DNA of 64,000 nucleotides, taken from assembly GCA_964036045.1 (NCBI GenBank), contig OZ038379.1, forward strand, positions 12,276,001 through 12,340,000, read 5' to 3'. Of this stretch, positions 23,617-57,580 are shown piece after piece; within the stretch, counting starts at the first letter, position 1; each line of letters opens with the position of its first letter. Position numbers and translations under genes: made by a program. The DNA comes from Eutreptiella sp. 'Long Island Sound 2002' (lineage: Eukaryota; Protista; Euglenida). Under the pieces are notes generated by a model. It did not search any database. It was not told the origin of the DNA and saw only the letters and a program-made list of their open reading frames with translations.

Positions 23617-23862
23617 CTAGGAACAAAATAGAAACAACACCGTTTGTGTGCCTTTCCATAGTAGGTTTCCGTAGTAGTGATGCAGTAGCTCATGGTAGGT
23701 GGCTGTGTCAAACAAGGTACCCCTCGCCTTTGTCATAGCCACGCCCTTGTCCATGCCACAGTAAGTAGGGACCGTATTTATTTCAAACCTACTTGAATTC
23801 GGTACCAAATGTAGTGCAGTCACATAAGACATGGTCTTGGTGATGAATATGCCAGATACATA
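23617..23862 (-). pseudogene. M1/gluzincin aminopeptidase-like fragment (HELLH..YGNL)
   Basis: KTMSYVTALHLVPNSSRFEINTVPTYCGMDKGVAM...TYHELLHHYYGNLLW resembles the M1 pattern VP.F..GAMEN...HELAHQWFGNLV. It is bounded by stops. A ~165-bp block flanking it is duplicated at offset 411 (23474/23885). Confidence 0.35.
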
Positions 23863-25015: not shown

Positions 25016-25143
25016 ACAAACTGACAAATGCCTAATGAAGAGGTAATTAAGTTAAACCAGTGTTTTGAGCAAGCTCAAAACACGAGTTTAACCCTAGTGC
25101 ATGCACGAAACAATACTAAACAATGCTTGCCTCGGCTCACTGG
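25016..25143. repeat. Internal split-direct-repeat junction (B1-A2)
   Basis: The 71-bp unit matches 29790-29860 and the 57-bp unit matches 24570-24626. Joined, they read ...AAACACGAG|TTTAACCCTAG..., the predicted circle junction. Confidence 0.95.
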
Positions 25144-25194
25144 AAAGCTTTACCAGGCTGGCTTCTGACACCCGCGGCGCGACCCAGGTGGGCG

Positions 25195-28524: not shown

Positions 28525-28774
28525 AAGCCCGCACTACCGAGATGATGCCTCTCGCCCCACTTGAGCTGCCACCATTTTGAACGTGCTGAGCGAGTTTCCG
28601 AGATAGGATGGAAGGCAAGTTGCCCTCTTCTCCCAAGGATTCCTCAAGGTCTCCCAACCTTCGCAAACTGGACGCGTATCCAGCCGTCGTAGACGGCTTC
28701 CAACCCCGAATTGCAACACCCACAGGTGTTGTGGGTTCTTCCTCACGTCGGTGCGACTCAAACTCAAGCGCCAA
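27134..28774 (-). CDS. Tyrosine recombinase (ORF2)
   Basis: Complete catalytic set: FLRVAEA (R), NSKT (K), HCFRRGGA (HxxR), WGRW (W), AMAY (Y). Low-complexity C-terminal tail. Confidence 0.95.
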   Translation of the reverse strand: MALEFESHRREEEPTTPVGVAIRGWKPSTTAGYASSLRRLGDLEESLGEEGNLPSILSRKLAQHVQNGGSSSGARGIISVVRACEDLQMAAGVVKPLHWRLAKAGAQAGVQEYASPVLLRHLVDRTTSDGERAVVAMALVSYVCFLRVAEAASVRVGDVRDSSYLVFWNSKTGHEGWQRRPVPPWVRPFVEWLHDWAEGRGCARDDLLFPAGAPQLEKTMADLVRGTAWSRHRWHCFRRGGAAACWKRGPALPHFKWWGRWAATATAMAYALGYRDEEVVAPLCLPQVWGSVSAAAFADPQQVWGDIMFDERHQDKNRPVWGRSERRRAAPSMFRGKRFAGEPRSDAADLGSSSEDTGSGVSADDGPSVRSGVRRTAEVVPAPEARRSSRAGPTMGRPGVAERGLAGPAGPLPSGGSDASDAASAGQQVPGNGGERAKFRFTAPPPGRPKAPTKSGPWRSAAEPARGHRGVKRTVGGRALSVPAGRKGGAAVAVATPSTRRPVTTRVAGATRRPRHSDGESGPGRKRSRTLPSGAGSTRGGARQQR

Positions 28775-28852
28775 CCACCGGTACGTCGGCCTCTGCTCTC
28801 CCGGTGGTTCGATCCCCGCGACGGCATCCCGATACCGCCACGGGTTTTCTCG

Positions 28853-29777
28853 TCACGACCACAATGGGCACCGGAAACACCAGTACCGCAAGTTCTCCAG
28901 CTTTCCCGCCGCCGTGCATCTACGGCAATCTTCGCTGGGTTGTGCGTCCACCGGTATCCAGTCTCCGGCCTTGGATAACCAGTAGGCTACCCCGTCCCGT
29001 TTCTTGAATTGAATACTCTTGTTTTGGGAAATTCAGTATGGTTTTCGGGACACTCTGCAGAGGGAGAAGGCGACCTACGGTCGGCAATGTTTGCAGTGGC
29101 ACCCAGTGGTGTAGGGAAAGGGCAAAGAGGGGTTGGGTTGGGTAAGGTGATACCCCACACATGAATTTTGCATGAAAAATGACAAATTTCCAACAAAGAA
29201 AAAACCAACGCGTACGTGTTGAGATTTCAACACGTACGCGTCTATGTGAACAGATCTTAGCAGTTATATATCTCCAGGAATCCCCGCCACTCGCCATGGC
29301 CTCATCAAAATTTTCCGACTTTCCTTTGGGCCCCGATGCTTGTCCCGGCGAATACCTCTTCACGTAAGTCGCATGTGCAACAATGAGGACTTTCCACATT
29401 CTGTACGCCAACGCATCTCCGAGACTTAATTGTTCTCCTTGCTTACCTCCCACGTCTGCTGGCCTACTCGGCTTCGGAACCGCCGTCACATACTTCTTTA
29501 ATACCGCACATGCATCCTTCATCCAAACCGTGACTCTTTCCTTCTTCAAAAACTCCTCTATCCCATCCAAGTTGAGGTCCGGGATTTCCGTGTCCTTGCG
29601 CTTTTCAATCTCCGTGGCGGCTAATTGTACCCTCAAGCGCTCCACCTCCGCATCCTGTCGACGGAGCATGGCCTTCAACTCGGCCAATTCCTTGGCCGTA
29701 CCCGATTCCGCGTGTGAATCGTCGGACACAAAAATTGCGTCCTCTTGCATCCCGCTGCTCCCGTGAAGCCCAGACAT
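28853..29777 (-). pseudogene. gag-like ORF1 with two frameshifts
   Basis: Starts at ATG 29777 (MSGLHGSSG), has a coiled-coil N-terminus and ends KKRDGVAYWLSKAGDWIPVDAQPSEDCRRC...CFRCPLWS-stop. Removing two 5-nt segments (29219-29223, 29009-29013) gives a 304-aa ORF. Confidence 0.8.
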
Positions 29778-32700
29778 GGCAAAAAGGGAACAAACTGACA
29801 AATGCCTAATGAAGAGGTAATTAAGTTAAACCCGTGTTTTGAGCAAGCACAAAACACGAGGCTCCCAATTAGGAGGTGTGTTCAAATTCACCCGGATAGT
29901 ACATGGAAGGGTGAATTGTACAACACAATGCAAAGCAAGCGAGCAGCGCTCAAAAGCTCAAAGACATGGAACTCGATATAGACAGCAAAATGCGGTGCCC
30001 CATGTGCTGCTGGTCTCAACACCAATAATCTGATGGGGGGCACGGTACAAAAGGGATTGAAAACAGGAAAATGGACGACCCTTGGACGTCTCAGTTTGAA
30101 TGGCATCGCATCTATACCATAAACAATTTGTCATTTGGGGCACGCCAACTCTTCGGCAATCGCGAAGTCTCCCGAGGCAGAAGGAATACCTTCTCGAGCC
30201 TTCCGTAGGATGGGATCAAAATTTTACCCGCGCCCGCAAGGGTCGGCCAAAACCAAAACCAAACAAAACCAAAATTTGGTGCCACGCACAGGTTAGCAGC
30301 TGCTACAAGCGGAAAAGTAAGGATGCGGGCTTCAATGGGGGAGAGCTGATGAAAATGTTCTCAAATAAAATGCATCCGGGCTGCACCCGTGACAAGTGGT
30401 AAAAGAGCCTTCTCCGTTCTCAAATTGTGCAATGCCAGTAAGGGAAACCACTTCAAGTGATAGCGACATCCACACAATGCAAGCCAATCCACCCTCCACC
30501 ATTGAGTGCAAAAGTCCAAGATATCGCACTTTTGATGCCAATTCAAACGAAAGCGGATGGTTCGCCGCTGCTGTGCATAGCGCATGACGTCGTGCCTGCA
30601 AAATCGTTCAAAAACCCAGTTCAGCCGCAAACGGTGGTCACTAGTGAAAAAATATGAACACGACTCTCCAATACGGCCATGTGGTTGGTCGGCATGGCAA
30701 ATCCCTGCTCTAGCACTCCCCGGGAACCTAGTGACTTGGGAGGAAGAAGCGACTCGGCGAAACTTTTGCGTCCTCTTGGTACGGCCATGGGGACATACGG
30801 AGAGAATGGGCCCAATTGTGGTTGTAGCTCACGTGTTCCCTTTGCAAGATTTTGTCCTTCATGCAAAACGGAAAATCTTTGAATCTTTGAATTGATAAAA
30901 AAAAAGCATAACCATGGATTGTCTCATTGAAATGATACATTTAGACGATGTAATGGGATAGCACTGTCGAAACAATCAACATCATTCACTTTTCTTTTTT
31001 TTGGGCCCCTAGTCTGCATTCTGAAATTGCCAAATTTCTGCAATAGATAGAAATCAGAATCAGAAATGTGATCCTAGAAAATCCGGTTCCAACATTGTGT
31101 CAATTCCTGAATGTCCTGTCAGGTACTGAGGAGAAAAGATGACGCGGCTCAGTAAGGGACTTATCCCTTACTTAGCCGCATCCCACAAATGTGTCAGAAG
31201 CTCCCCACCACAGACATCGTCCAGAGACGACCGCGAATTTACAGGGAATTATCTGCGCTGTGTGCGAAAACTCCCCACCACAGACATCGTCCAGAGACGT
31301 ACCGCGAATTTACGGGGAATTATCTGCGCTGTGAAACCTCTAGTGCGTCCTATAGGCTGCAAATTGCATACTGGCACCTGGTGGTTTGACACTCCGTGAT
31401 CTGCCCGGTTACCCGCTTGACCGTTTCTGTGGCTACTGTGGGGACCGCGAAGGCACCAAAACGGTGCCTGACTGTGTTGACCTGTATATACAGTAGAGTG
31501 ATTGATCGATCACCCAGGTGTGATACCTGAGTTTCAATCTGCCACAGATCCGACAGCAGCCAAAACATCGGCGTTGTCCACATGTGACACTAAACTCATG
31601 AGTACTTGGGTCGAATGCATGTACTTCGTCCACCGCGGGTGGTAGTAGCTTTAAAGCTATCAATCAGCAAGATTGGTCGGCAATTGATTGTCATCGTCCT
31701 CCTCCTCTTGAACCTCCTCATCTTCCTCCCCATCTCTACCATGAAATCAACCCAAGCTGGGTCATTCTCATCATCCTCATCACTATCCTCATTAAAGTGC
31801 CGGTGCCTCAACTCCAGGGGACGGATTCCACAACAAGTGCTTGGAGACACACTACAGCACTAGGTGGGAAAAAACTTTTTGTGCTTCGCACCCCGAATTT
31901 GCGTTCATGAAATTGCCGCTCTGGTTTTGGTGCCTTGGGCTTGCCTTACTCGATCACTGCCCAAAAGGCTCAGCCTCGGCACAAGTCGGCTCTGACATAC
32001 TTGGTGGGAGCAGATGTGCGACGTGATTCGCTGCACGTCCTTGGTTAGCCGTGCTTAGCACATTCAGAATTCCCTCTTACGCTTTGTGCCTGCTTTGTGC
32101 CCATGCATGCTTATGTGCATTCATTCAAGGAACAATACCGCCGAAGGCGGCGAAGCAAAGAATGAGGAACACATCAAAATACATCCCTGAGGTTGGGCTC
32201 CATTAGAAAATTAGGAAAACATCCTGGCTCTACAAAACACATTATTAGAACATAAGGATAAGGAAAAAAGCCCGCGGTGGCCGAGGCCATTATTATTCCT
32301 TATTTAACACAAATTCTGCAGTACGACAAGAATATTCGAGATCTTGGGATAGGAGTTTCAAAATGGAATGGAATGGAGTTTAGCTGGAACGGAGTTTTTC
32401 AAATGGAATGAGTTGCCAGGGTCCGGAACGGACTTTATGAAGGGAACATCTTGGGATATGCACATTCCCTTGGGGATCCACACGGCAATACCCCTTTCAG
32501 CACGAAGTGCAAACACTCTGTCCAACAGCGGAGTGGTGTTCCGCTAGTGGTGGTGAGCCTATGTACCCCAACAAGTACAACCCTCACCAGCACACGCTCT
32601 CACGGTGCAACAAGAGCGCAAACTGCGTGCCCCGTCTCCCTTCAGGCCATCCTCAGCACTGCCGGTCACGGCAAGTTCATCCGTGAAGCAACATGTACCT

Positions 32701-34575
32701 CGCGGCACGTCTTCAGTAAACTCGATGCATGTTCCCGCACCAAAAACGGGGCTTCCACCAAAACCTTGCGTCTAATTCCCCTAAACGAATGCCTCGGGTG
32801 TGTGCTCTTGTGGTAAAGTTGTCGGGGAAATCTTCGCGCCAAACGGGGGCTCCGGATGGGAAACGGAGTACAGAACCTTTGTTCGATGATCTAGGGATTT
32901 TTCACATGTATCCAAACCCCAACCAAGCTTAGGTTGGCGGCTCAATTCAAAGATTCAAAGATTTTCCGTTTTGCATGAAGGACAAAATCTTGCAAAGGGA
33001 ACACGTGAGCTACAACCACAATTGGGCCCATTCCCTCCCAAGTCACTAGGTTCCCGGGAGTGCCAGAGCAGGGATTTGCCATGCCGACCAACCACATGGC
33101 CGTATTGGAGAGTCGTGTTCATGTTTTTTCGCTAGTGACCACCGTTTGCGGCTGAACTGGGTTTTTGAACGATTTTGCAGGCACGACGTCATGCGCTATG
33201 CACAGCAGCGGCGAACCATCCGCTTTCGTTTGAATTGGCATCAAAAGTGCGATATCTTGGACTTTTTGCACTCAATGGTGGAGGGTGGATTGGCTTGCAT
33301 CGTGTGGATGTCGCTATCACTTGAAGTGGTTTCCCTTACTGGCATTGCACAATTTGAGAACGGAGAAGGCTCTTTTACCACTTGTCACGGGTGCAGCCCG
33401 GATGCATTTTATTTGAGAACATTTTCATCAGCTCTCCCCCATTGAAGCCCGCATCCTTACTTTTCCGCTTGTAGCAGCTGCTAACCTGTGCGTGGCACCA
33501 AATTTTGGTTTTGTTTGGTTTTGGTTTTGGCCGACCCTTGCGGGCGCGGGTAAAATTTTGATCCCATCCTACGGAAGGCTCGAGAAGGTATTCCTTCTGC
33601 CTCGGGAGACTTCGCGATTGCCGAAGAGTTGGCGTGCCCCAAATGACAAATTGTTTATGGTATAGATGCGATGCCATTCAAACTGAGACGTCCAAGGGTC
33701 GTCCATTTTCCTGTTTTCAATCCCTTTTGTACCGTGCCCCCCATCAGATTATTGGTGTTGAGACCAGCAGCACATGGGGCACCGCATTTTGCTGTCTATA
33801 TCGAGTTCCATGTCTTTGAGCTTTTGAGCGCTGCTCGCTTGCTTTGCATTGTGTTGTACAATTCACCCTTCCATGTACTATCCGGGTGAATTTGAACACA
33901 CCTCCTAATTGGGAGCCTTAAGGTTTTGTATTTGTCTCTTGAAGCAAGGATGAACATAAACCATCTGAGTGTCACGCATCGTGAAGCTTTGAGGATATGG
34001 ATGGGCTGCATGTGTCTCACCCGCATATTGTGCTTTGGAATCAACGCAAAATGATGGAGTGCAAGCACCGATGTTAGTAGCAAGTGTCATAAAGTTCAAT
34101 TGCATAGTACGTAGGTGTTTGCCCTCATGCTGTAAATGCTAAAGGGAGGGCATTTCAATACTTTTGCACCCACCGTAAACCCAATTGTCTGCTCGTGCCG
34201 CTACTCCGCAGCTACTCCGCAAAAGTTCTTGTGTCATGACGCTACGCTTGTTAGTTCATGTATACATAATACATAATTATTGCAGTTAGGCAAATTAGTT
34301 GGCATGTTTGGTCGTCGCATTGTAGGCTGCTAGGTGCTTTCTTTTGCCTTTACTGCTTGCTGTCAGTTACACCTTCTCCACAGTGACCTGCATCATCTCC
34401 AAACTGACTTGCACCCTTGTGACCTTTGACCTTGGAACTTGACCTTTGCTCTTTGTTGTGTGCACTTTGACCTTTTACCTCTGACCTTTACCTTTGCTCT
34501 TTGTTGGGTGTGCCTTCACCTTACCTTTTTGCTCAAGGTCTCTCCACCAGAACATGGGACTTGTGGAGATGCCTA

Positions 34576-43152: not shown

Positions 43153-43352
43153 NNNNNNNNNNNNNNNNNNNNNNNNNNNNNNNNNNNNNNNNNNNNNNNN
43201 NNNNNNNNNNNNNNNNNNNNNNNNNNNNNNNNNNNNNNNNNNNNNNNNNNNNNNNNNNNNNNNNNNNNNNNNNNNNNNNNNNNNNNNNNNNNNNNNNNNN
43301 NNNNNNNNNNNNNNNNNNNNNNNNNNNNNNNNNNNNNNNNNNNNNNNNNNNN
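43153..43352. other. Assembly gap (200 N)
   Basis: Run of exactly 200 N, typical of a scaffolding join. Confidence 0.99.
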
Positions 43353-46300
43353 CTTTTGGCTCATTTTTTACTGTGCGATGCCACCAGCGGGTGTTCCCTT
43401 CAATGGATCTGCACAGCGTGTGATATGTGTGGGCCGGCGAGTGGGTCTGTCACATGGCAGACCACAAGGGGGCGGGGGGTTGCCTAGTGCACACAAAATG
43501 CGTGCACCTGCAAAAGGGGGGGGGGGGGCGCCACAAGAGATGTGTACAGGATGTGATATGGGCTGTGAAATGAGTTGTGCTGATCTTGGAGATTAACCCC
43601 GGTCTTTGATCTCCTGCGTGGCCAACGCTCGCCAGTCTGCACGGCTTGCGTGTTGTAGGAGCAGCTGGTGCTTACACAATGTAAGTGGGTGGAGCTGACG
43701 TGGGCGGACCCCGAATCCAGTGATCTGCTGCAGAGCCCTGACGAGGGCACCATCATGGGACGGTATGTGTGTGTGTGCCTACGTGAAAAGAAGTGCTGCC
43801 CACAAGGGGGGCCTTGGGGACCGGCATGATGCTCTTTGTTGGGCACTGTGCAAAGTGCGTTGCCACGGGTCTTGTGGGGGCCCTTTTTGTTCTTCTTTCT
43901 GCCCTCGGGACCCCCCCCCCCCCCTGCACCTGGTGCACCGTCCTGCCAGCCGCCAACCGTCGTCAGTTGACCGCCAACCGCCGCTGTTGAACCGCTGATT
44001 GCCCCTGTTCATCGAGGGCCCACCAATCCGTCCCTCTTTGTGACAGAAAGGTACCCATGGTCCTCCACAGCCACTGACGGGGCTTTCTTCTGCTTCATGC
44101 GCTGCTAACGCTTGCCGGCTTACTGCCACAACCCAGTCTTCTTTCTGGGCCAAGGGGGGGTTTCCAGGTGAGAAATTCTGTGGAACGAATCCTGCACGAC
44201 AGTTGTGTAGGGCTTGTGTGGCATATTCTCGTAGCCCCACCACCACAGGCCAAAGCGCACTACAAAAAATATGATGTGATTTGACATGCACACAGCACAA
44301 GTTTCCTCAGTTTGGCAGTAGTAGGCTCCTGCCAAGCATTCAAGTACTCACCCTCGTCTGTGCCGACCGGCCCAGGTCTGGCGCGAGGCATCGTGTGCGC
44401 GTCAAGACCAAGACTGCAGCCTATGGTCTTTGCAGTCGGCCCTCGCACTGTCATACAGCCCTGTTCCAACCATCCGTGGTGTGAACGCCTGCCGCCACTG
44501 CCGTTGACCGCCAACCACCATCGATGCAGCACTTGCCATGAAATCCGGGGCCAAAGGCGCCGAACCAAACCTCTATTGCCTTCGGCAACACACCTCAAAG
44601 CGTAGAGGGGACTGTGTTACCTGTGGGCACACGACGAGTACCACTCACATGAATGCGGCAAGACTACGCACCTTCATATATGAGCTTTGAACATGGTGCG
44701 TGGTCACATGTTGAAGGTACGGGTTGCTGTGCTATTGGGGCAGCAAACTGGTTAAGCAATTTGTGCACCAGTTTCTTGGGGACTCCCGTCCACAGCACCC
44801 AAGGCATATGGCCATTGCCAACCAGTTCCGAATGTTGCCAGAGGGGGGGGCGGGGGCGGGGTGAGACAAGTCTCAAGACTTAGGTTGCATTGGTAACATA
44901 GGCAGCGCAAAGCAAAACACAAATTCAACATGCATAGAAGACACCACCCCCTGCCATGATGCCGCGATGATCATTGCCAAGTGATCATTGTTGCCGGCAC
45001 CACTTGGCACGCCTTTCCGTGATCTTTTCCAGCAAAGGCGGTACCGCACGCTCGTGTCCGATTTAACAGGAGGCCACGGATATCCCCGGATTCCACAACA
45101 GCCACAAACGGACACCCATTGGCTTCACATCTTGCGCCTGAGCGGGGGCGGGACCGGTGATGTGCAATATGCCGCAGACACAGCTTTGGCCGTTTTCGGA
45201 TGGCGGTAGTTGTATTGTTTTCAGGCGTTTCGGCCGTTTTTGCACAGCGTTATTTGGATTAATTTTTGGCGATTTTAGCCATTTTCGGACACCGCTGTTA
45301 GCCCACCATTTTCTCGAGGGGTGGCAGGTCATGGCAGCAATTCATTAAGAATTTTTTTGTGGGGGAGGGGCAGAGTTTTGCTTAACAACTCAGCATCTCC
45401 TGGGGGGGGGGGGGGCTAACACCCCTCCCTCTCGGACCCGATTTGACCAACACCCATGATTTCATGATCTTCGAGCTTTGCAACTTGCATATCTGTTCAT
45501 AAGAAGCATCAACATTGCGAGCACATATTCAAATTTCGTCCCAAAAAAGTTGCCTTTATACGCGTAGTCATGTGGTACCTGGCTTTTGCGGTTAATAGTG
45601 CCGTCAAAGCGTTAGGAGGTTGATTTTTTTGACAGGCAGCATCTGACAAACCTACAGAAGCCAGTGATGCGATTTGAAACATTGTGGGAAAAAAGTGAAA
45701 TGTACAACAGGAAATATTGATTTGGGCTAATTTTTTTGGTACACAAACTGTTGGACTTTTGGGTTCCAGACCCCCCGCGCCCCCTTTTAAGCAAAACTCA
45801 GGGGAGGGGGTCAAAAGAACCCCCCAAAAACGTGGTAGACCTCAAAAGCATCGGCAAGCAACGCCAATGCGCACACTCGGCACTGAGCAAAGGGAAGAGG
45901 GTGGGGGACGGTTCTGGGCCGGGGGGGGGAGACCACAAATACCAGAGGTCTTCGAAGGAACCCCCTGTCTCTCAGTCGCACACCCGCTCTTCTCAGGCGA
46001 AGAATGGAGCCGGCGGATGCACAGCCCACGTGCAAATCCGTGGTGGAGGAGGACTGACCCTGGGGTCCTGGAAGAGGGGTTACAGTTGGCGATGGGACAT
46101 GCGAGCGGAGCAAGCAGGCGGTACCAATTCGGAACGGCTTGCAGTCCATGCTACAGGAGGCGGATCGTGAAGATGGCTGCTCATAGGAAGCCACTCTGCG
46201 TCGAAACCTGAAGGACCGCACCAGAAAGGCGCACACGGGGGCGGCGTACAAATTCTTGGGGCACAGTGCAGAGCTGCGCAGGGGCGCAGGGTGGGACCGC

Positions 46301-49300
46301 GAAGGGGCGCAGGGCAAGGTGGCGCAAGGGCGCAGCATGGGGTTGCGCAGGGGTGCAGCAATGGGCACGGCATGACCTTCAGAAAGAGGGCCAGAAAGAG
46401 AGGGGGCTGATGTACAGGCATCTGCTGGAGATGGTGTAAAGGCCAGGGATGTATTAGAACGACCGTTTACCGTCGGAGGAGGGGGGATCCCCCCCCCCCC
46501 CGCTGGACCCCTCTCCCCCCCCCCCCCGCCCCTCCTCCCGTTCCACTGTTTGAGGCAGAATTTTCTTCTGCGCCTTTGGTGCAACAGGATTTAAGCTTAA
46601 AAATTTTTTTCTGGCACCTTTGACGCCGGGGTCAGGGGGACCATACAAGGATCCAGTATATCCAATACATCTCTGGTAGAGGCCCCCCGGGTGCACCTAG
46701 GGTTGGTCGTGCTTTGAGATGACGCTGGATGAAGTCGAAGGCATCGGTATCCACCGCTTGGCAGTCATGGGGCAGCTTGTAGGGGTCCTGGAGCACGTCG
46801 ACTGTACGATCACCTCAGCCCCAGAGACCCCGTGCTTTGCGGAGACGAATACCTGCCGTGGGCGTGGGTTCCTCTGGGCTTTGATGTTCACTGGCGCTTA
46901 GCCACGATGGAGATGGCGGCCGCGGAGTACGTCCGCACCCCGTCCCCCCTTTACAGACCCCCACACCTTCGTCAAAGGCTGTCTTCAATTGGTTGATTTT
47001 TTTTTACCATTTTAGGCGGGTGCCCAGAATTTTGCTTCACAACTCAACATCTCGCGGGTGGGGGGTGGGGTGGGGGGGATCTAACACCCCCCCCAAAGCC
47101 CCCGGTAAGTGATTGGGCCGCATTGTCCATTGGCCGACAAGGACGGTCAGGGATGGCAATAAGAAGCGCGGGTGGAGATGGGACATGGGAGTGGGTTCGG
47201 GCCCTAGTCCCCTGTCTGCCCTGTCCTGCCACCCCCCCCCCCCCCCCAATGTACAGCTGCAGTAGTATGGCATTTGTTGGTCTTCTGGGAACGGGGGGTT
47301 TCAGTCGGGTTTGTTGTGCCCCGTCCCATGTGAAGACAAAGGCCTCACAATCCTCTGCGGGGTTGGGGTCCCCCCCGCACAGCTCAGCCCCACCCTTTAG
47401 CAACGCTCTGCGTGTGCCTCGTGGGTTCATTTGTATGTCTGCGGGAATGCCCTGTTTCGGTTTCACACGTGGCGACTGGGGAGCGGGTTCTGACCCCCGG
47501 CTTGCGTGAACCTGACCGCCCACTTGTGTCACCATTCCCTTGCCCGTGTGGACTCAAATGGAATTAAGAGGGGATTCGAGAATGTCGCCAAAACGCCACA
47601 AAGAATACGTCACCCTCTTTTGGGCCCCCATGAAGGCAGGGGTGAGGTAGCCACTTCTGATTTAGTTCTACTTTATTGGGGACCACTTCTGAATTTTTGC
47701 TCCCCGCGCTTGGTGTTGGGGATCCCCGAGAATGGGGTGACAAAGCATACCCGCCCTCTTTTGGGCCCCCGAGAAGGCAGGGGTGAGGTAGCCACTTCTG
47801 ATTTTGTTCCCCTTTGTTGGTGACCACTTCTGAATTTTTGCTCCCCGCGCTTGGCGTTGGGGATCCCCGAGAATGCAGGGGCACCATAGCATTTCCGCCC
47901 CCTTTTTGGCCCCCGAGAAGGCAGGGGTGAGGTAGCCACTTCTGATTTTGCTCCCCTTTGTTGGGAACCACTTCTGAATTTTTGCTCCCTGCGCTTGGCG
48001 TTGCAAGGCAAACATATGCTGAGGACGATGGGGGATTGGACTGTCGAACCATAGCCTATTGGGGTGGAGTCTCCGGACTCGAGTCCAAGGGTTGTAGGGA
48101 TGCGTCCATGGTACCCGGAGTCTGAGGCATTGCCTTTGCAACTAGGAACAAAATAGAAACAACACCGTTTGTGTGCCTTTCCATAGTAGGTTTCCGTAGT
48201 AGTGATGCAGTAGCTCATGGTAGGTGGCTGTGTCAAACAAGGTACCCCTCGCCTTTGTCATAGCCACGCCCTTGTCCATGCCACAGTAAGTAGGGACCGT
48301 ATTTATTTCAAACCTACTTGAATTCGGTACCAAATGTAGTGCAGTCACATAAGACATGGTCTTGGTGATGAATATGCCACATACATAGAGTCATCCTTAA
48401 TATGTCTTCTGTTGCAAGGCATACATATGCTGAGGACGATGGGGGATTGGACTGTCGGACCATAGCCTATTGGGGTGGAGTCTCCGGACTCGAGTCCAAG
48501 GGTTGTAGGGATGCGTCCATGGTACCCGGAGTCTATGGCATTGCCTTTGCAACCAAAAACAAAATAGAAACAGCACCTATTTTTTCGGCAGTAAAACGGG
48601 TTACATGGCCGAGAAAAACGGGTTAATAGCCCGTTTTCGTGCCGGTAAAACGGGTTACTTGCACGTTTTACATGTAAATAAACGAAATGAATAATATGTA
48701 ATACATGAACATACATAATACATAATTTAAATAATGGAAAACAATGATTTTGTGAACTAACAAGCGTAGCGTCATGACACAAGAACTTTTGCGGAGTAGC
48801 TGCGGAGTAGCGGCACGAGCAGACAATTGGGTTTACGGTGGGTGCAAAAGTATTGAAATGCCCTCCCTTTAGCATTTACAGCATGAGGGCAAACACCTAC
48901 GTACTATGCAATTGAACTTTATGACACTTGCTACTAACATCGGTGCTTGCACTCCATCATTTTGCGTTGATTCCAAAGCACAATATGCGGGTGAGACACA
49001 TGCAGCCCATCCATGTCCTCAAAGCTTCATGATGCGTGACACTCGGATGGTTTATGTTCATCCTTGCTTCAAGAGACAAATACAAAACCTTAAGTTTAAC
49101 CCTAGTGCATGCACGAAACAATACTAAACAATGCTTGCCTCGGCTCACTGGCCTGTTCAGTTGCCACCGTAGTGGCCAGTATAACATCGTTGTGACCGAC
49201 AGCGTTCGCCTCCCCGCAGGGGACCCGACCAATACCCACACGTTCACGCACTCACTCACCCGCGTATTCTGTCATGTCCCGCCGACGAAAGCAAAGATAC

Positions 49301-49726
49301 ATTCAACATACAGTGCCCCGTCCCTGCCCATCATAGCTGGTCATGCGCGGATGTAACTCAATCGCGGCAGGGGGTGGGTGGGTGGGGTCAGAGCAGGCCA
49401 CCCTCTCACCTTCAAACCCCCCCCCTGCGCCCACTACTGTCGCTCTTAAGCTGGACATCCCACCGCTCCCACTCCACAAAACAGCTATGAAGTGTGGCAG
49501 AAACCCGCCCCGATTAGTGGCAGGGGGTGGGGGGGGGGGGGGGGGGGACAAACTGACAAATGCCTAATGAAGAGGTAATTAAGTTAAACCAGTGTTTTGA
49601 GCAAGCTCAAAACACGAGTTTAACCCTAGTGCATGCACGAAACAATACTAAACAATGCTTGCCTCGGCTCACTGGAAAGCTTTACCAGGCTGGCTTCTGA
49701 CACCCGCGGCGCGACCCAGGTGGGCG

Positions 49727-52700
49727 TCATACATAAGCTAGGCCTTGCACCCAGCAGAGTTCAGGATACTTCTGCAATACTCGCCATCTCTCCCACGCCT
49801 CCAACTCAGCTTGGTGCACCCGCCCCCCGAAATCCATGTCCACTCGACTCATTGGATCGGCAGGATGAAGCTCTGACGGCACCCAAATTAGACGTACTAT
49901 CACTCCTGTGTTATACAGCACCCACGTCAGTGCGCGCAACACACGCAACTGGGTACGCAGATGGGATGCTGCCTTCAAACCCCTCACCTGAGCAATGCCC
50001 ACCATACTGTCGGCGAAGACAGTGAAAACCTTCCAACCCAACCGCACCGCCAATCTCACCGCCCACGCTATGCCCATGAGCTCCGCCACCTGCTGGTTAC
50101 AGGGTCCGTCCGGGCATACCCATGTTCGCACAGACTGGTTAGCAGGCAACACACCACCCACCCTGTAGCAAACACCGTCTTTGGCGGCATCCACCAATAT
50201 CACAGCCCCAAACAAATCGCCTCTAGATGCCGGCCTTTCAGAGAGGCACCAACCTCCCAGCTGCCGTACCCTTCGCATGCGCGACTCCGACAGCGGTCTC
50301 CACTTCTGGCCTATGCGCGCAATTGCTGTCGCCAATCCCTCCAACACTTTAACAGGGGTGGCTGGCGCCCTTTCCGGTCCAAATCTCGACCAGGCATACG
50401 CTCCTGCGAGCACCCCTGAAAACCCGCGTCGTGGCCCTAAATGCCACTGCAGGGTACCCAGCAGCTTGTCCAGCCGCCGCTTCGAGTACCCCCCCGTGGC
50501 CAGTCGCAACCACGCAACCAGGAACTGGAGGAACACAAAAGGCTGCACTTGGATGGAACGTTCTTTCAAATCAACCACCTTCCCCAAGGCCTGTAGCTTC
50601 TGGACGGGGCTCAGTGTGCTCTTAGCACTAACCAAGAATCCCGCCCGCACGATACGATCTTTCAAGTGACTCGTGGTTGTCCCAAGCAGGGGTTTGTCGC
50701 TGGATAACAAAATAAAGTCATCCAAGTAATGCACCAAAAAGACCCCATCCGGCACTGCATCTCCCACCACCCGCCCCAATATCTCCTGACACAGATAGGG
50801 CGAAAAGGCCCACCCATTGACAAACGGGAGGCGGTCCAGCGACACGAGCCCCCCCTTCTGGTGGGTAAAGAAGCGGAAAATTCGCCTCGCTTTTCTGGGT
50901 AACAGGAACGACCAGAAGGCATTAGAGAGGTCGATATGAGTACCGTACAGTTCCACCCCAGCCGGCTGCTCCGCCATCCATCTACCTATTCCCTCCCAAG
51001 ACGCTAGTGAAAACTTTGGTGGCTTGAGATGCAATCCCCTGTGAATACCCACGCAACTTAAAATCAAGGAGCACTTAATATCATTTTTAATTTGGGTATT
51101 ACAAAAGGAAAACAGGTTGGCGGTAGAGAGGGTGATTCATCATGTAAAACACCAGTCCTTCGAATGGCGTCCGTCATTCCACTCACCGTTGCTCGCACCC
51201 TCCCATTTCCCCTGTCAGCCTCCCGCAAATCAAAAGTTCTCATGAATTCCAAAAACTCCGGGGGCACCGCAGCATCCCATTCCGCTTCAGACATCGCATA
51301 GCACCCCACATTACCTATACCAGCCTCCAAAATCTCCGGGGTGACCTTCGCTTCCCTAGGCTTGGGAGAGGTGGAGATCGAGGTGATTAACAGAATCCCA
51401 AACCCCTGGCGAGAGGTACTGTACTGCCATCAGGCAAATCCCCAGTGGCTCATCCAACCGAAAGTCCTCACAAACAGAAATAATGCGATTCAACAGTATC
51501 CACAGACGACGCACCAGAACCCCTACTGCACACTGTAGCCTACACTTGAGCCACCAGAAGTGTTGGGTCAGCACAGCCATGATGGTCAGGAGAATTCCAC
51601 CTTTAAGATGCAGGCCAGCCTCCGTGCCCACCCAACCCCCCAGAATCCCAGGCACTCTCAAGGGGGAGCCCAGGGGCTGGTCACCGTTGCTGGCGAGCCC
51701 CCCCCCCTGGTGCTGCCGGCTCCACTGGGTAGAGTCCTGGATCGCTTCCGTCCCGGTCCGGACTCTCCATTGCTGTGCCGCGGTCGTCGTGTAGCTCCCG
51801 CCACCCTTGTGGTAACCGGGCGTCTCGTTGAAGGCGTCGCCACCGCCACCGCCGCGCCACCCTTCCGGCCTGCTGGTACTGAAAGGGCTCTGCCACCCAC
51901 CGTACGCTTGACTCCTCGGTGCCCTCGGGCAGGCTCAGCGGCTGACCGCCATGGCCCCGACTTCGTTGGCGCCTTTGGTCGTCCCGGCGGCGGCGCCGTG
52001 AATCTGAACTTTGCCCTCTCTCCTCCATTGCCGGGCACTTGCTGCCCAGCACTCGCTGCATCGCTGGCATCCGATCCCCCGCTGGGGAGTGTCAATGGAC
52101 CGGCAGGACCCGCAAGTCCCCGCTCAGCGACACCTGGCCTCCCCATCGTCGGTCCTGCTCTTGAACTCCTTCTTGCCTCTGGCGCTGGAACAACCTCTGC
52201 AGTCCTCCGGACACCCGAACGCACACTCGGCCCATCATCGGCCGATACTCCTGATCCCGTGTCCTCCGATGAACTGCCCAAGTCTGCCGCATCAGATCTC
52301 GGTTCCCCTGCAAATCTCTTACCCCTGAACATACTGGGCGCTGCTCGGCGTCGCTCGCTCCGGCCCCACACCGGCCGGTTTTTGTCCTGATGCCGCTCAT
52401 CGAACATGATGTCTCCCCATACTTGCTGCGGATCCGCGAAAGCTGCCGCTGATACGGAACCCCAAACCTGTGGTAGACAAAGCGGGGCCACAACCTCTTC
52501 ATCTCGGTACCCAAGCGCATACGCCATTGCCGTCGCCGTTGCTGCCCATCTGCCCCACCATTTAAAATGAGGCAGGGCCGGTCCTCTCTTCCAGCACGCT
52601 GCAGCTCCTCCACGTCGGAAACAGTGCCACCGATGTCGGGACCATGCCGTCCCACGCACCAAGTCCGCCATTGTTTTCTCGAGCTGAGGAGCCCCTGCAG

Positions 52701-53078
52701 GAAAGAGCAAGTCGTCCCTGGCGCACCCTCGTCCCTCAGCCCAGTCGTGAAGCCACTCAACAAACGGCCTGACCCAAGGAGGCACCGGCCTCCTCTGCCA
52801 CCCTTCATGTCCTGTCTTACTATTCCAAAAAACCAAATAACTGCTGTCACGTACATCCCCAACACGTACGCTAGCAGCCTCCGCCACTCTAAGAAAACAA
52901 ACATATGACACCAGGGCCATTGCCACGACCGCCCTTTCGCCATCCGAAGTCGTTCTATCCACCAAATGACGCAGCAGTACAGGACTTGCATATTCTTGGA
53001 CTCCCGCTTGGGCCCCCGCTTTAGCAAGCCGCCAATGCAGTGGTTTGACGACCCCTGCAACCATTTGGAGGTCTTCAC
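49727..53078 (-). pseudogene. RT-RNase H, copy 2, frameshifted
   Basis: Split into several ORF pieces by insertions at 51087-51090 and 51378-51381 and by a +1 C run. There is also an in-frame VN insertion in RLPF(VN)GWAFSP. Confidence 0.92.
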
Positions 53079-53328
53079 AAGCCCGCACTACCGAGATGAT
53101 GCCTCTCGCCCCACTTGAGCTGCCACCATTTTGAACGTGCTGAGCGAGTTTCCGAGATAGGATGGAAGGCAAGTTGCCCTCTTCTCCCAAGGATTCCTCA
53201 AGGTCTCCCAACCTTCGCAAACTGGACGCGTATCCAGCCGTCGTAGACGGCTTCCAACCCCGAATTGCAACACCCACAGGTGTTGTGGGTTCTTCCTCAC
53301 GTCGGTGCGACTCAAACTCAAGCGCCAA
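51658..53328 (-). CDS. Tyrosine recombinase, copy 2 (catalytic domain intact)
   Basis: 556-aa ORF with the same R-K-H-R-W-Y motifs and an in-frame 2-aa insertion in the tail. Confidence 0.9.
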   Translation of the reverse strand: MALEFESHRREEEPTTPVGVAIRGWKPSTTAGYASSLRRLGDLEESLGEEGNLPSILSRKLAQHVQNGGSSSGARGIISVVRACEDLQMVAGVVKPLHWRLAKAGAQAGVQEYASPVLLRHLVDRTTSDGERAVVAMALVSYVCFLRVAEAASVRVGDVRDSSYLVFWNSKTGHEGWQRRPVPPWVRPFVEWLHDWAEGRGCARDDLLFPAGAPQLEKTMADLVRGTAWSRHRWHCFRRGGAAACWKRGPALPHFKWWGRWAATATAMAYALGYRDEEVVAPLCLPQVWGSVSAAAFADPQQVWGDIMFDERHQDKNRPVWGRSERRRAAPSMFRGKRFAGEPRSDAADLGSSSEDTGSGVSADDGPSVRSGVRRTAEVVPAPEARRSSRAGPTMGRPGVAERGLAGPAGPLTLPSGGSDASDAASAGQQVPGNGGERAKFRFTAPPPGRPKAPTKSGPWRSAAEPARGHRGVKRTVGGRALSVPAGRKGGAAVAVATPSTRRPVTTRVAGATRRPRHSNGESGPGRKRSRTLPSGAGSTRGGGSPATVTSPWAPP

Positions 53329-56300
53329 CCACCGGTACGTCGGCCTCTGCTCTCCCGGTGGTTCGATCCCCGCGACGGCATCCCGATACCGCCACGGGTT
53401 TTCTCGTCACGACCACAATGGGCACCGGAAACACCAGTACCGCAAGTTCTCCAGCTTTCCCGCCGCCGTGCATCTACGGCAATTAAATCTTCGCTGGGTT
53501 GTGCGTCCACCGGTATCCAGTCTCCGGCCTTGGATAACCAGTAGGCTACCCCGTCCCGTTTCTTGAATTGAATACTCTTGTTTTGGGAAATTCAGTATGG
53601 TTTTCGGGACACTCTGCAGAGGGAGAAGGCGACCTACGGTCGGCAATGTTTGCAGTGGCACCCAGTGGTGTAGGGAAAGGGCAAAGAGGGGTTGGGTTGG
53701 GTAAGGTGATACCCCACACATGAATTTTGCATGAAAAATGACAAATTTCCAACAAAGAAAAAACCAACGCGTACGTGTTGAGATTTCAACACGTACGCGT
53801 CTATGTGAACAGATCTTAGCAGTTATATATCTCCAGGAATCCCCGCCACTCGCCATGGCCTCATCAAAATTTTCCGACTTTCCTTTGGGCCCCGATGCTT
53901 GTCCCGGCGAATACCTCTTCACGTAAGTCGCATGTGCAACAATGAGGACTTTCCACATTCTGTACGCCAACGCATCTCCGAGACTTAATTGTTCTCCTTG
54001 CTTACCTCCCACGTCTGCTGGCCTACTCGGCTTCGGAACCGCCGTCACATACTGCTTTAATACCGCACATGCATCCTTCATCCAAACCGTGACTCTTTCC
54101 TTCTTCAAAAACTCCTCTATCCCATCCAAGTTGAGGTCCGGGATTTCCGTGTCCTTGCGCTTTTCAATCTCCGTGGCGGCTAATTGTACCCTCAAGCGCT
54201 CCACCTCCGCATCCTGTCGACGGAGCATGGCCTTCAACTCGGCCAATTCCTTGGCCGTACCCGATTCCGCGTGTGAATCGTCGGACACAAAAATTGCGTC
54301 CTCTTGCATCCCGCTGCTCCCGTGAAGCCCGGACATGGCAAAAAGGGAACAAACTGACAAATGCCTAATGAAGAGGTAATTAAGTTAAACCAGTGTTTTG
54401 AGCAAGCACAAAACACGAGGCTCCCAATTAGGAGGTGTGTTCAAATTCACCCGGATAGTACATGGAAGGGTGAATTGTACAACACAATGCAAAGCAAGCG
54501 AGCAGCGCTCAAAAGCTCAAAGACATGGAACTCGATATAGACAGCAAAATGCGGTGCCCCATGTGCTGCTGGTCTCAACACCAATAATCTGATGGGGGGC
54601 ACGGTACAAAAGGGATTGAAAACAGGAAAATGGACGACCCTTGGACGTCTCAGTTTGAATGGCATCGCATCTATACCATAAACAATTTGTCATTTGGGGC
54701 ACGCCAACTCTTCGGCAATCGCGAAGTCTCCCGAGGCAGAAGGAATACCTTCTCGAGCCTTCCGTAGGATGGGATCAAATTTTACCCGCGCCCGCAAGGG
54801 TCGGCCAAAACCAAAACCAAACAAAACCAAAATTTGGTGCCACGCACAGGTTAGCAGCTGCTACAAGCGGAAAAGTAAGGATGCGGGCTTCAATGGGGGA
54901 GAGCTGATGAAAATGTTCTCAAATAAAATGCATCCGGGCTGCACCCGTGACAAGTGGTAAAAGAGCCTTCTCCGTTCTCAAATTGTGCAATGCCAGTAAG
55001 GGAAACCACTTCAAGTGATAGCGACATCCACACGATGCAAGCCAATCCACCCTCCACCATTGAGTGCAAAAGTCCAAGATATCGCACTTTTGATGCCAAT
55101 TCAAACGAAAGCGGATGGTTCGCCGCTGCTGTGCATAGCGCATGACGTCGTGCCTGCAAAATCGTTCAAAAACCCAGTTCAGCCGCAAACGGTGGTCACT
55201 AGTGAAAAAATATGAACACGACTCTCCAATACGGCCATGTGGTTGGTCGGCATGGCAAATCCCTGCTCTGGCACTCCCCGGGAACCTAGTGACTTGGGAG
55301 GAAGAAGCGACTCGGCGAAACTTTTGCGTCCTCTTGGTACGGCCATGGGGACATACGGAGAGAATGGGCCCAATTGTGGTTGTAGCTCACGTGTTCCCTT
55401 TGCAAGATTTTGTCCTTCATGCAAAACGGAAAATCTTTGAATCTTTGAATTGATAAAAAAAAAGCATAACCATGGATTGTCTCATTGAAATGATACATTT
55501 AGACGATTTAATGGGATAGCACTGTCGAAACAATCAACATCATTCACTTTTCTTTTTTTTGGGCCCCTAGCCTGCATTCTGAAATTGCCAAATTTCTGCA
55601 ATAGATAGAAATCAGAATCAGAAATGTGATCCTAGAAAATCCGGTTCCAACATTGTGTCAATTCCTGAATGTCCTGTCAGATACTGAGGAGAAAAGATGA
55701 CGCGGCTAAGTAAGGGATAAGTCGCATCCCACAAATGTGTCAGGAACGCCACAACGCAGCGTCGTCCTGAGACGTACCGTGAATTACGTAGCAAGCATCT
55801 GCGCTCTGTGTACAGAGACTCTAGTGCGTACTTCTGTACGCGCTTTGCCACAGCTTGCCGCTGGCGCTACCAGCGCCGTTCCATAGGCTGCAAATTGCAT
55901 ACTGGCACCTGGTGGTTTGACACTCCGTGATCTGCCCGGTTACCCGCTTGACCGTTTCTGTGGCTACTGTGGGGACCGCGAAGGCACCAAAACGGTGCCT
56001 GACTGTGTTGACCTGTATATACAGTAGAGTGATTGATCGATCACCCAGGTGTGATACCTGAGTTTCAATCTGCCACAGATCCGACAGCAGCCAAAACATC
56101 GGCGTTGTCCACATGTGACACTAAACTCATGAGTACTTGGGTCGAATGCATGTACTTCGTCCACCGCGGGTGGTAGTAGCTTTAAAGCTATCAATCAGCA
56201 AGATTGGTCGGCAATTGATTGTCATCGTCCTCCTCCTCTTGAACCTCCTCATCTTCCTCCCCATCTCTACCATGAAATCAACCCAAGCTGGGTCATTCTC

Positions 56301-57580
56301 ATCATCCTCATCACTATCCTCATTAAAGTGCCGGTGCCTCAACTCCAGGGGACGGATTCCACAACAAGTGCTTGGAGACACACTACAGCACTAGGTGGGA
56401 AAAAACTTTTTGTGCTTCGCACCCCGAATTTGCGTTCATGAAATTGCCGCTCTGGTTTTGGTGCCTTGGGCTTGCCTTACTCGATCACTGCCCAAAAGGC
56501 TCAGCCTCGGCACAAGTCGGCTCTGACATACTTGGTGGGAGCAGATGTGCGACGTGATTCGCTGCACGTCCTTGGTTAGCCGTGCTTAGCACATTCAGAA
56601 TTCCCTCTTACGCTTTGTGCCTGCTTTGTGCCCATGCATGCTTATGTGCATTCATTCAAGGAACAATACCGCCGAAGGCGGCGAAGCAAAGAATGAGGAA
56701 CACATCAAAATACATCCCTGAGGTTGGGCTCCATTAGAAAATTAGGAAAACATCCTGGCTCTACAAAACACATTATTAGAACATAAGGATAAGGAAAAAA
56801 GCCCGCGGTGGCCGAGGCCATTATTATTCCTTATTTAACACAAATTCTGCAGTACGACAAGAATATTCGAGATCTTGGGATAGGAGTTTCAAAATGGAAA
56901 TGAATGGAGTTTAGCTGGAACGGAGTTTTTCAAATGGAATGAGTTGCCAGGGTCCGGAACGGACTTTATGAAGGGAACATCTTGGGATATGCACATTCCC
57001 TTGGGGATCCACACGGCAATACCCCTTTCAGCACGATGTGCAAACACTCTGTCCAACAGCGGAGTGGTGTTCCGCTAGTGGTGGTGAGCCTATGTACCCC
57101 AACAAGTACAACCCTCACCAGCACACGCTCTCACGGTGCAACAAGAGCGCAAACTGCGTGCCCCGTCTCCCTTCAGGCCATCCTCAGCACTGCCGGTCAC
57201 GGCAAGTTCATCCGTGAAGCAACATGTACCTCGCGGCACGTCTTCAGTAAACTCGATGCATGTTCCCGCACCAAAAACGGGGCTTCCACCAAAACCTTGC
57301 GTCTAATTCCCCTAAACGAATGCCTCGGGTGTGTGCTCTTGTGGTAAAGTTGTCGGGGAAATCTTCGCGCCAAACGGGGGCTCCGGATGGGAAACGGAGT
57401 ACAGAACCTTTGTTCGATGATCTAGGGATTTTTCACATGTATCCAAACCCCAACCAAGCTTAGGTTGGCGGCTCAATTCAAAGATTCAAAGATTTTCCGT
57501 TTTGCATGAAGGACAAAATCTTGCAAAGGGAACACGTGAGCTACCACCACAATTGGGCCCATTCCCTCCCAAGTCACTAG

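What the first reader, a model, noticed from the sequence alone, without database searches (positions are those of the whole stretch)
50817..53486. TYRA micro-insertion scars confined to the retrotransposon: candidate undescribed TE-inactivation (or footprint) system
Seen: copy 2 has five insertions relative to copy 1. They are CA-TTGA-CA (50817-50820, +6), T-TTAA-T (51087-51090, +5), TCGA (51378-51381, +4), TG-TCAA-TG (52092-52095, +6) and A-TTAA-A (53483-53486, +5). Every core is T-Y-R-A with a 0-2 bp duplication of unrelated target sequence. All lie within 2.7 kb of the element's coding region. ORF-offset tracking and reading show only homopolymer changes (and one divergent patch) in ~9 kb of duplicated flank, and I saw no such scars between the fold-back arms. 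The scars break RT and gag, and two older ones are shared by both copies (7 in total in copy 2). They do not match mariner (TA) footprints, precise piggyBac excision or simple slippage. Inference, alternatives: (a) a host defence that cuts silenced or repeated TE DNA and tags the break with a fixed tetramer, an insertional analogue of fungal RIP; (b) excision footprints of a hyperactive TY...RA-ended element that targets TE chromatin; (c) by-products of the element's own recombinase, whose ends and target contain TTAA. TTGA, TCAA and TTAA are also the C-to-T derivatives of TCGA, which hints at a methylated or deaminated CpG core.
Basis: partly seen in the sequence, partly recalled or inferred. 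Interest (0 to 1): 0.92.

Follow-up and report, generated by a model that had tools for sequence, protein, structure and literature searches.

The report
Hairpin-type micro-insertion scars in euglenid retrotransposons
One copy of a duplicated retrotransposon in this euglenid genome carries five tiny insertions that share one precise structure (a duplicated target dinucleotide, its inverted copy and T/A at the turns), which looks like the repair scar of hairpin-capped DNA breaks such as transposon excision footprints, not like a new defence system against transposons.

Summary
Copy 2 (43353-57580) of a 14.2-kb duplication has five clean insertions of 4-6 bp relative to copy 1, all inside the RT/RNase H element. 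Every other indel is a homopolymer change or lies in one divergent patch.

The TYRA rule is a special case of a stricter one. All five events, and seven more in other copies of this element and of an unrelated repeat, read XY-(T)-rc(XY)-(A)-XY. That is a 2-bp target duplication, the inverted copy of the same dinucleotide, and T/A at the turns. Twelve of 12 have the duplication and 11 of 12 the inverted copy; neither is expected by chance.

This matches palindromic (P) nucleotides from hairpin-capped ends, as in hAT/Transib/MULE/RAG excision.

Single events scale with copy divergence, so the class looks like real mutation. Copy 2 is a local burst. One of its sites is also an inversion breakpoint in a copy on another chromosome.

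I found no evidence for a TE-specific defence, a methylated CpG core or the element's own recombinase. No element with a 2-bp duplication and T...A ends was found.

Raw reads were not available. Public contigs show only the uninserted form, which is not decisive. An earlier scan note on two "shared scars" does not hold.

The parts
18829..33049 (+). Copy 1 of the 14.2-kb duplicated unit (reference state, no micro-insertions)
   Evidence: Self-BLAST and MAFFT. At least 17 near-identical units lie on the same chromosome-scale scaffold.
43153..43352 (.). 200-N assembly gap; copy 2 begins at the next base
43353..57580 (+). Copy 2 of the unit, 99.2% identical to copy 1
   Evidence: It is a distinct, basal member of the unit family and keeps ancestral bases at 25958, 26535, 28506 and 29833 (copy-1 coordinates).
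24570..29858 (-). Retrotransposon copy 1: 1109-aa ORF with reverse transcriptase and RNase H-like matches, and 75-bp split direct repeats at 25012-25086 and 29786-29860
   Evidence: The boundaries come from the empty site at 34258..33034.
49095..54417 (-). Retrotransposon copy 2, with its ORF broken by the insertions
50815..50820 (.). Micro-insertion 1: CA-T-TG-A-CA (+6), at residue 748 of the ORF, inside the RT match
   Evidence: It is the only copy of 36 with an insertion here. The same site is an inversion breakpoint in a chromosome-5 copy.
51086..51090 (.). Micro-insertion 2: TT-T-AA-TT (+5)
51376..51379 (.). Micro-insertion 3: GA-TC-GA (+4)
52090..52095 (.). Micro-insertion 4: TG-T-CA-A-TG (+6), the same 8-mer as insertion 1 on the other strand
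   Evidence: It is the only copy of 29 with an insertion here.
53481..53485 (.). Micro-insertion 5: on the minus strand TT-T-AA-TT (+5), in the upstream ORF
25604..25605 (.). Recurrently hit TG dinucleotide. It is empty in the window, but other copies carry TG-TCAA-TG (two copies) or TG-GGCA-TG (one copy) here.
   Evidence: Pattern survey of 48 copies
29022..29268 (.). 247-bp 5'-truncated fragment of a dispersed, 99%-identical repeat, nested in the element (also at 53581-53827). It is not part of the scar class but was the source of two further events.

Best explanation
The five insertions are real repair scars of double-strand breaks whose ends were hairpin-capped. Each scar keeps both copies of a 2-bp staggered target (XY...XY). 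Between them lies the inverted copy of that dinucleotide, which is a palindromic 'P' addition made when a hairpin is opened 2 nt from its tip. One T usually sits at each turn.

The geometry fits a cut-and-paste element that duplicates 2 bp on insertion. On excision its first nick would fall one base inside its 5'-T ends, and the flank 3'-OH would then attack the other strand. The opened ends CA-T-TG and TG-A-CA can anneal through the 2-nt P tails, giving the 6-bp class, or join bluntly, giving the 8-bp class. Loss of one or both turn bases gives the 5- and 4-bp classes.

Shown: the structure, its recurrence, its polarity and its accumulation with copy age. Inferred: the hairpin chemistry, the transposon as agent, and local re-insertion ('hopping') as the cause of five scars in 2.7 kb of one copy.
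For: (1) Twelve independent micro-insertions in two unrelated repeat families all show a duplication of 2 bp or more. The chance is about 0.155 per event, with a product of 2e-10.

(2) Eleven of the 12 carry the reverse complement of the duplicated dinucleotide in the filler. The chance is 0.01-0.055 each, with a product of about 7e-18.

(3) All 13 single turn bases are T when read on the hairpin strand, by my tally of the events listed. CA-T-TG-TG-A-CA (L045) is exactly the un-annealed form of CA-T-TG-A-CA.

(4) The fillers are not templated within 150 bp on either side.

(5) There are no multi-base deletions in 151 kb of element alignments. The only other multi-base indels are an ATAT slippage and a GA beside a G run.

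(6) Single events scale with divergence: 4 per ~900 differences in dispersed copies and 1 per ~140 in the units. This argues for mutation and against random error.

(7) Site 1 is also the breakpoint of a 657-bp inversion in a copy on another chromosome, with 2 nt lost at the other breakpoint. The TG at 25604 was hit three times among 48 copies.

(8) The sequence between the scars is otherwise perfect, unlike a poor read.

(9) Flank-hairpin excision and footprints made by end joining are established for hAT, Transib, MULE and RAG (PMC5499845).
Against: No element with a 2-bp duplication and 5'-T...A-3' ends was found.

No filled site was seen at any of the six sites surveyed.

Known flank-hairpin superfamilies duplicate 5-9 bp, not 2.

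Five scars in one copy against about 3 private substitutions is a large excess that local hopping explains only by assumption.

The copy lies 7.5-10 kb from a contig start. Public contigs from four runs show only the empty form.
Confidence: 0.55

Rival explanations
1. The cluster in copy 2 is an assembly or sequencing artefact. The start of a contig in a highly repeated array was built from few or faulty molecules.
For: Copy 2 starts at a 200-N gap. No contig of four public runs carries any of the five insertions. The best runs hold 0.85-0.86 of the sampled words, a shortfall about what loss of the copy-2-specific words would give. Five events against about 3 private substitutions is far above the family's rate.
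Against: The five events have exactly the structure of single events in copies on other chromosomes, and those scale with divergence. Surrounding stretches of 268-300 bp are identical to copy 1. Copy 2 is a distinct lineage with ancestral bases that public contigs also show. Contigs drop variants present in 1 of 20 or more copies.
Confidence: 0.2
2. The scars are real mutations made without a nuclease or transposon. Very short template switches occurred during replication or break-induced repair synthesis across this copy: the nascent strand copies XY, turns back over it, and then resumes.
For: The direct-inverted-direct order is what a strand switch and return would give. Repair synthesis in a recombining array could explain a local cluster (units are rearranged in many ways).
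Against: A 2-nt switch is far shorter than described events. The constant T at each turn and the blunt-joined 8-bp form are not predicted. The coincidence of site 1 with an inversion breakpoint points to breakage.
Confidence: 0.15
3. A host system recognises silenced or repeated TE DNA, cuts it and marks the break.
For: All five scars of copy 2 lie in the element and none in 8.9 kb of flank (P about 0.007 if placement were uniform). All events found so far are in repeats, but only repeats can be compared.
Against: Seventeen or more sister units with the same element are untouched. Old dispersed copies carry 0-1 event each. Scars show no bias to disabling positions: two of the five are in frame. 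The core is target-derived, not a fixed tag.
Confidence: 0.04
4. The scars are by-products of the element's own recombinase or of its integration and excision.
For: The element's ends and target contain TTAA-like strings. Tandem head-to-tail copies exist.
Against: In ten independent insertions the element shares only a single G with the target and makes no 2-bp duplication with an inverted copy. The same scars occur in an unrelated repeat. No recombinase domain could be confirmed by Pfam or PDB sequence search.
Confidence: 0.03

Closest known systems
Excision footprints of flank-hairpin DDE transposons (hAT/Hermes, Transib, MULE) and P nucleotides of V(D)J coding joints
   Same: Both copies of the target duplication are kept. 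Short inverted copies of the flank lie at the joint. The modal 2-nt palindromic addition is present, joining uses end joining, and only insertions result (mechanism as reviewed in PMC5499845; P-nucleotide knowledge is my own).
   Different: The duplication is 2 bp, against 8 (hAT), 5 (Transib, RAG-like) or 9 (MULE). One extra T sits at each hairpin tip, which implies a first nick one base inside the element rather than at or outside its end. No element was identified.
Tc1/mariner footprints (TA + 2-3 terminal bases + TA)
   Same: A 2-bp duplication with a few extra bases and a net gain of 3-6 bp. An earlier scan note reports TA-CGG-TA footprints in this genome (s1-193083, not checked here).
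   Different: The targets here are CA, TT, GA, TC, GT and TA, not TA only. The filler changes with the target instead of being the element's fixed end bases.
Short template-switch mutations (strand switch and return during replication)
   Same: An inverted copy of adjacent sequence is inserted in place.
   Different: Only 2 nt are copied. Constant T/A turn bases and a retained direct duplication are not features of that class.
Intron-flanking short direct repeats in Euglena, and gain of introns by repair of staggered breaks
   Same: Insertions bounded by short direct repeats are pervasive in Euglena genes: 84% of introns have them (PMC12501133).
   Different: Those are introns of tens to thousands of bases. 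No inverted dinucleotide has been described, and the link is speculation.
Fungal RIP and other repeat-targeted mutagenesis
   Same: It would also hit duplicated TE DNA.
   Different: RIP makes C-to-T transitions in all copies of a repeat. Here one copy of 17 or more carries insertions, and substitutions are not raised.

Membership tests
Flank-hairpin transposon excision footprint (hAT/Transib/MULE/RAG type) | Both copies of the target-site duplication remain at the donor site | tested here: met
   12 of 12 events have a direct repeat of 2 bp or more around the filler
Flank-hairpin transposon excision footprint (hAT/Transib/MULE/RAG type) | Palindromic additions: an inverted copy of the flank next to the joint | tested here: met
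   11 of 12 events contain the reverse complement of the duplicated dinucleotide; the chance product is about 7e-18
Flank-hairpin transposon excision footprint (hAT/Transib/MULE/RAG type) | An element with the matching duplication length and ends exists, and some copies of the site are still filled | tested here: not met
   Six sites were surveyed in 19-48 copies each and none was filled. The only new TIR-like insertion seen has a 3-bp duplication and CAC... ends. Earlier notes report 8-bp hAT MITEs.
Flank-hairpin transposon excision footprint (hAT/Transib/MULE/RAG type) | Duplication length typical of the superfamily (5-9 bp) | tested here: not met
   The duplication is 2 bp, or 3 bp in three events
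Flank-hairpin transposon excision footprint (hAT/Transib/MULE/RAG type) | A hairpin intermediate on flanking DNA | not testable with these tools
   Needs biochemistry or break-end sequencing
Tc1/mariner footprint | TA target and filler made of the element's fixed terminal bases | tested here: not met
   Only 1 of 12 events has a TA target; the filler varies with the target
piggyBac | TTAA target and seamless excision | tested here: not met
   The empty sites lack TTAA; the TTAA strings arise from TT + T + AA
Repeat-targeted host mutagenesis (RIP-like) | All copies of a repeat are affected, and non-repeated DNA is spared | tested here: not met
   One unit of 17 or more is affected. Outside copy 2 there is no difference between flank and TE.
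Polymerase slippage / tandem duplication | The inserted bases repeat the adjacent bases | tested here: not met
   Only 2 of the 4-8 inserted bases repeat the flank. True slippage events (ATAT, and an 8-bp duplication) look different.
Assembly or polishing artefact | Absent from raw reads of the source sample | not testable with these tools
   Only Logan contigs could be laid. They show the empty form, but rare variants are dropped.
Tyrosine-recombinase (DIRS/VIPER-like) retrotransposon, as host element of the scars | Reverse transcriptase plus RNase H, split direct repeats, and no target duplication | tested here: met
   RVT_1 at 1.4e-12 and a weak RVT_3 match; 75-bp split repeats; 1-nt overlap at ten junctions
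Tyrosine-recombinase (DIRS/VIPER-like) retrotransposon, as host element of the scars | A tyrosine recombinase domain | tested here: inconclusive
   No Pfam or PDB sequence match for the N-terminal 700 residues or for the upstream ORF. Earlier scan notes call such elements gag-YR-RT-RNase H.

The most novel reading that the evidence does not exclude
Euglenids harbour an undescribed break-making activity, either a transposase family or a domesticated nuclease. It cuts with a 2-bp stagger, forms flank hairpins with one extra T at the tip, and can hit one repeat copy many times in a short period. If its targets prove to be chosen (for example transcribed or unsilenced retrotransposon copies), it would be an insertional way of disabling mobile elements.
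Probability: 0.1. Interest if true: 0.8.

Novelty: new variant of a known kind. Interest (0 to 1): 0.5.

Why it matters
If raw reads confirm it, this is a sharply defined mutational signature: 2-bp duplication, inverted dinucleotide and T/A turns. It accounts for almost all multi-base indels in young repeats of a euglenid genome.

It would be the first sign of hairpin-type break repair in this group. It predicts a specific, still unidentified element or nuclease with a 2-bp stagger and 5'-T ends.

It also gives a simple string rule for scanning whole genomes. That scan would show where and when such breaks happened, whether they favour mobile elements, and whether they relate to the short direct repeats that flank most Euglena introns.

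Tried and rejected
(1) Abortive, extremely truncated retroposition. The 6-bp insertion GTTACA in L023 equals the 3' end of the dispersed repeat whose 247-bp fragment sits at 29022. I rejected this because GT-T-AC-A-GT fits the general rule and no other filler matches a repeat end.

(2) Local templating of the fillers. None was found within 150 bp.

(3) cDNA-mediated conversion of copy 2. It is not needed: copy 2 has the unit-specific bases at 25905-6 and ancestral bases elsewhere, as expected for a basal unit.

(4) A 3-bp duplication model. It needs extra deletions in most events.

(5) The 3.25-kb insertion with 12-bp inverted repeats as the agent. Its 3-bp duplication and CAC ends do not fit.

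(6) A stop-codon or frame bias of the insertions. On inspection, the stop triplets that seven of ten fillers contain looked no commoner than expected, and two of the five copy-2 insertions are in frame. I did not test this formally.

(7) The TGTCAATG at 18301 as a polymorphic flank scar. It is fixed in 19 of 19 units and cannot be polarised.

(8) One pattern survey failed because I mistyped the flank.

I inferred flank lengths from match coordinates instead and checked five flanks directly.

(10) Enrichment of the 8-mer class in the window is weak: 17 against 10.7 +/- 2.9.

(11) Older tandem repeats in the window show ordinary 1-10-bp indels of both signs and add nothing.
Full report
**Setting.** The window is part of a 2.28-Gb assembly (scaffold C2, 12.28-12.34 Mb). 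Earlier scan notes call it a euglenid. It holds a 14.2-kb duplication: copy 1 at 18829-33049 and copy 2 at 43353-57580, 99.2% identical. Copy 2 begins at the first base after a 200-N gap (43153-43352), so it is the start of a contig. The unit is not an assembly duplicate of one locus. At least 17 near-identical units lie between 4.6 and 16.2 Mb of the same scaffold and on small unplaced contigs. Each has the inverted partial unit that forms the 'fold-back'.

**The host element.** Each unit holds a 5.3-kb retroelement (24570-29858, coding on the minus strand). In copy 1 it has a 1109-aa ORF that matches reverse transcriptase (RVT_1, 1.4e-12) and, weakly, an RNase H-like domain. Its limits come from an empty site in the inverted partial unit. 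A tyrosine recombinase could not be confirmed by sequence.

**The observation.** Every other indel is a length change in a G or C run or lies in one divergent patch.
- The five sites lie at residues 748, 659, 564 and 328 of the long ORF and near the end of the upstream ORF. Copy 2's ORF is split.
- They are insertions, not deletions in copy 1. Thirty fetched copies and pattern surveys of 36 and 29 copies show the empty state everywhere else.
- The 'two older shared scars' are not scars. One is a TTGAA tandem repeat present in all family copies. The other is a hairpin inside a nested 247-bp fragment of another repeat.

**Is copy 2 a real, separate copy?** Yes. At 25958, 26535, 28506 and 29833 it keeps the base found in dispersed copies on other chromosomes and in the units that lack the 247-bp fragment, while most sister units carry derived bases. 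At 25905-6 it has the unit-specific bases. It is therefore a basal member of its unit clade. Public contigs carry both alleles at such positions.

**More events.** Other copies of the element carry single insertions of the same kind:
- TGTCAA at 25604, in a unit at C2:7.44 Mb and in a copy on C5.
- TGGGCA at the same dinucleotide, in a copy on C1.
- GTTACA at 25194 (L023), TCGA at 29418 (L026) and TCTGA at 29759 (L030).

Twenty copies of the unrelated dispersed repeat (9 kb in all) add CATTGTGA and TAT. In 151 kb of element alignments there is no multi-base deletion. The only other multi-base indels are an ATAT slippage and a GA next to a G run.

**The rule.** Written with the duplicated target outside, the events read as follows:
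- CA|T TG A|CA, three sites (one of them found in two copies), in both orientations
- GT|T AC A|GT
- CA|T TG TG A|CA
- TT|T AA|TT, twice
- TC|T GA|TC
- GA|TC|GA
- TC|GA|TC
- CA|TG CC|CA
- TA|T|TA

Every event duplicates 2 bp of target (three extend to 3 bp). Eleven of 12 carry the reverse complement of that dinucleotide between the two copies. Against random inserts of the same length at the same sites, the duplication has P about 0.155 per event (product 2e-10). The full pattern has P of 0.01-0.055 per event (product about 7e-18). When read on the strand that runs from the flank into the turn, all 13 single turn bases are T. The fillers are not copied from the neighbouring 150 bp. The GT event (TACA) and the 5- and 8-bp forms break TYRA but fit the rule. 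The idea of a deaminated CpG core is not needed.

**Mechanism.** An inverted copy of the last two flank bases is what opening a hairpin two bases from its tip produces. This is the origin of P nucleotides in V(D)J joints and of the footprints of transposons that excise through flank hairpins (hAT, Transib and MULE; PMC5499845). Two retained direct copies mean a 2-bp staggered target, as after insertion of an element.

A single T at each tip follows if the first nick falls one base inside an element whose strands both begin with T. The opened ends would then be ...XY-T-rc(XY) on the left. On the right the same holds on the other strand, read as rc(XY)-A-XY on the top strand.
- The 2-nt tails of these ends are complementary by construction. 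Annealing gives XY-T-rc(XY)-A-XY, the 6-bp class.
- Blunt joining gives XY-T-rc(XY)-rc(XY)-A-XY, which is exactly the 8-bp event in L045.
- Opening nearer the tip removes one or both turn bases, giving the 5- and 4-bp classes.

These steps are inference. The sequence shows only the end products.

**Real or artefact?** Only Logan contigs could be laid. All four runs, including an estuary metagenome and a second organism label, show the empty form at all five sites. Contigs drop variants present in one of 20 or more copies, so this does not settle the matter. Four points favour reality:
- Single events scale with divergence: 4 in 43 kb of dispersed copies with about 900 differences, and 1 in 103 kb of unit copies with about 140 differences. 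Random error would not do this.
- Copy 2's events have the identical fine structure.
- The stretches between them are perfect.
- Site 1 (26282|26283) is also one breakpoint of a 657-bp inversion in a copy at C5:15.13 Mb, with two bases lost at the other breakpoint. The TG at 25604 was hit three times. So these positions break in vivo.

One point weighs against reality: five events against about three private substitutions is a roughly 300-fold excess, in the first 10 kb of a contig. I put reality of the cluster near 0.8.

**TE confinement.** In copy 2, five events fall in 5.3 kb of element and none in 8.9 kb of flank (P about 0.007 if placement were uniform). They also fall within 2.7 kb, so a local cluster explains this equally well.
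- Outside copy 2, the same units show 1 event in about 103 kb of element. They show none in about 133 kb of flank (17 left flanks and 11 right flanks).
- The flank count is judged from match lengths, with five flanks checked base by base. Apart from homopolymer changes, they contain only one 8-bp tandem duplication.
- That is no difference. All events lie in repeats because only repeats can be compared.
- Sister units with the same element are untouched, which argues against a system that recognises the element.

**Agent.** I found no element with a 2-bp duplication and T...A ends, and no filled site in six surveys. Cut-and-paste elements are active in this array. Two units carry a 3.25-kb insertion with 12-bp inverted repeats and a 3-bp duplication, but its ends do not fit. 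The element's own junctions share one G with the target and do not resemble the scars.

**Verdict.** The best reading is hairpin-type break repair, most simply excision footprints. It is a new variant of a known kind, with the agent and the cause of the burst open. The defence-system reading is unsupported. Raw reads remain the decisive check.

Noticed in passing
window 29022-29268 and 53581-53827; loci L043-L062: A 247-bp insert in the element is the 5'-truncated 3' end of a dispersed repeat whose copies are 99% identical and lie on all large scaffolds (340 first-look candidates). All copies end in ...CAGTTACA followed by unrelated DNA, which is typical of a young non-LTR retroelement. Units lacking it (L017-L021) show that it entered after the unit began to multiply.
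   Followed up: partly
L068 (G000:C2:11893560-11897000), equivalent to window 21007-21009: Two other units carry a 3.25-kb insertion in the left flank. It has a 3-bp duplication (AAT), a 12-bp inverted repeat (CACCTCGCAGAG) at the left end and 19 bp inside the right end, and no long ORF. It looks like a recently mobile non-autonomous DNA transposon.
   Followed up: partly
L069 (G000:C5:15132140-15133000): A copy of the element has a 657-bp inversion (copy-1 coordinates 25626-26282). One breakpoint lies exactly at micro-insertion site 1, and two bases (AC, 25624-25625) are lost at the other. Both breakpoints lie in a CCCACCC motif.
   Followed up: partly
window 33034-34258: The 'fold-back' is an inverted partial unit that joins the element's left and right flanks directly. 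It is therefore an empty site for the retroelement, and it is present in nearly all units.
   Followed up: yes
L003-L005, L023: Some copies of the element are followed head-to-tail by a second copy (...CACGAG|TTTAACCC...), as expected from a circular intermediate or tandem integration.
   Followed up: no
window 3834, 4260, 13380, 18301, 39962: The 8-mer CATTGACA/TGTCAATG occurs five more times in about 50 kb of non-redundant window, against about 1.5 expected. The one at 18301 is fixed in 19 of 19 units. These may be old scars of the same kind but cannot be polarised.
   Followed up: partly
window 43153-43352: A 200-N scaffold gap sits inside a tandem-like array of near-identical 14-25-kb units, so the number and order of units here are probably not fully resolved.
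   Followed up: no
runs X1-X6: Estuary and sediment metagenomes hold up to 85% of the sampled words of this element, so the organism or a very close relative is present in those samples.
   Followed up: no
window 25004, 18992, 19386, 20875, 21964, 22708, 27151: G or C runs of 12 bases or more differ in length between units by 1-7 bases. This is either real instability or the assembly's main error type.
   Followed up: no
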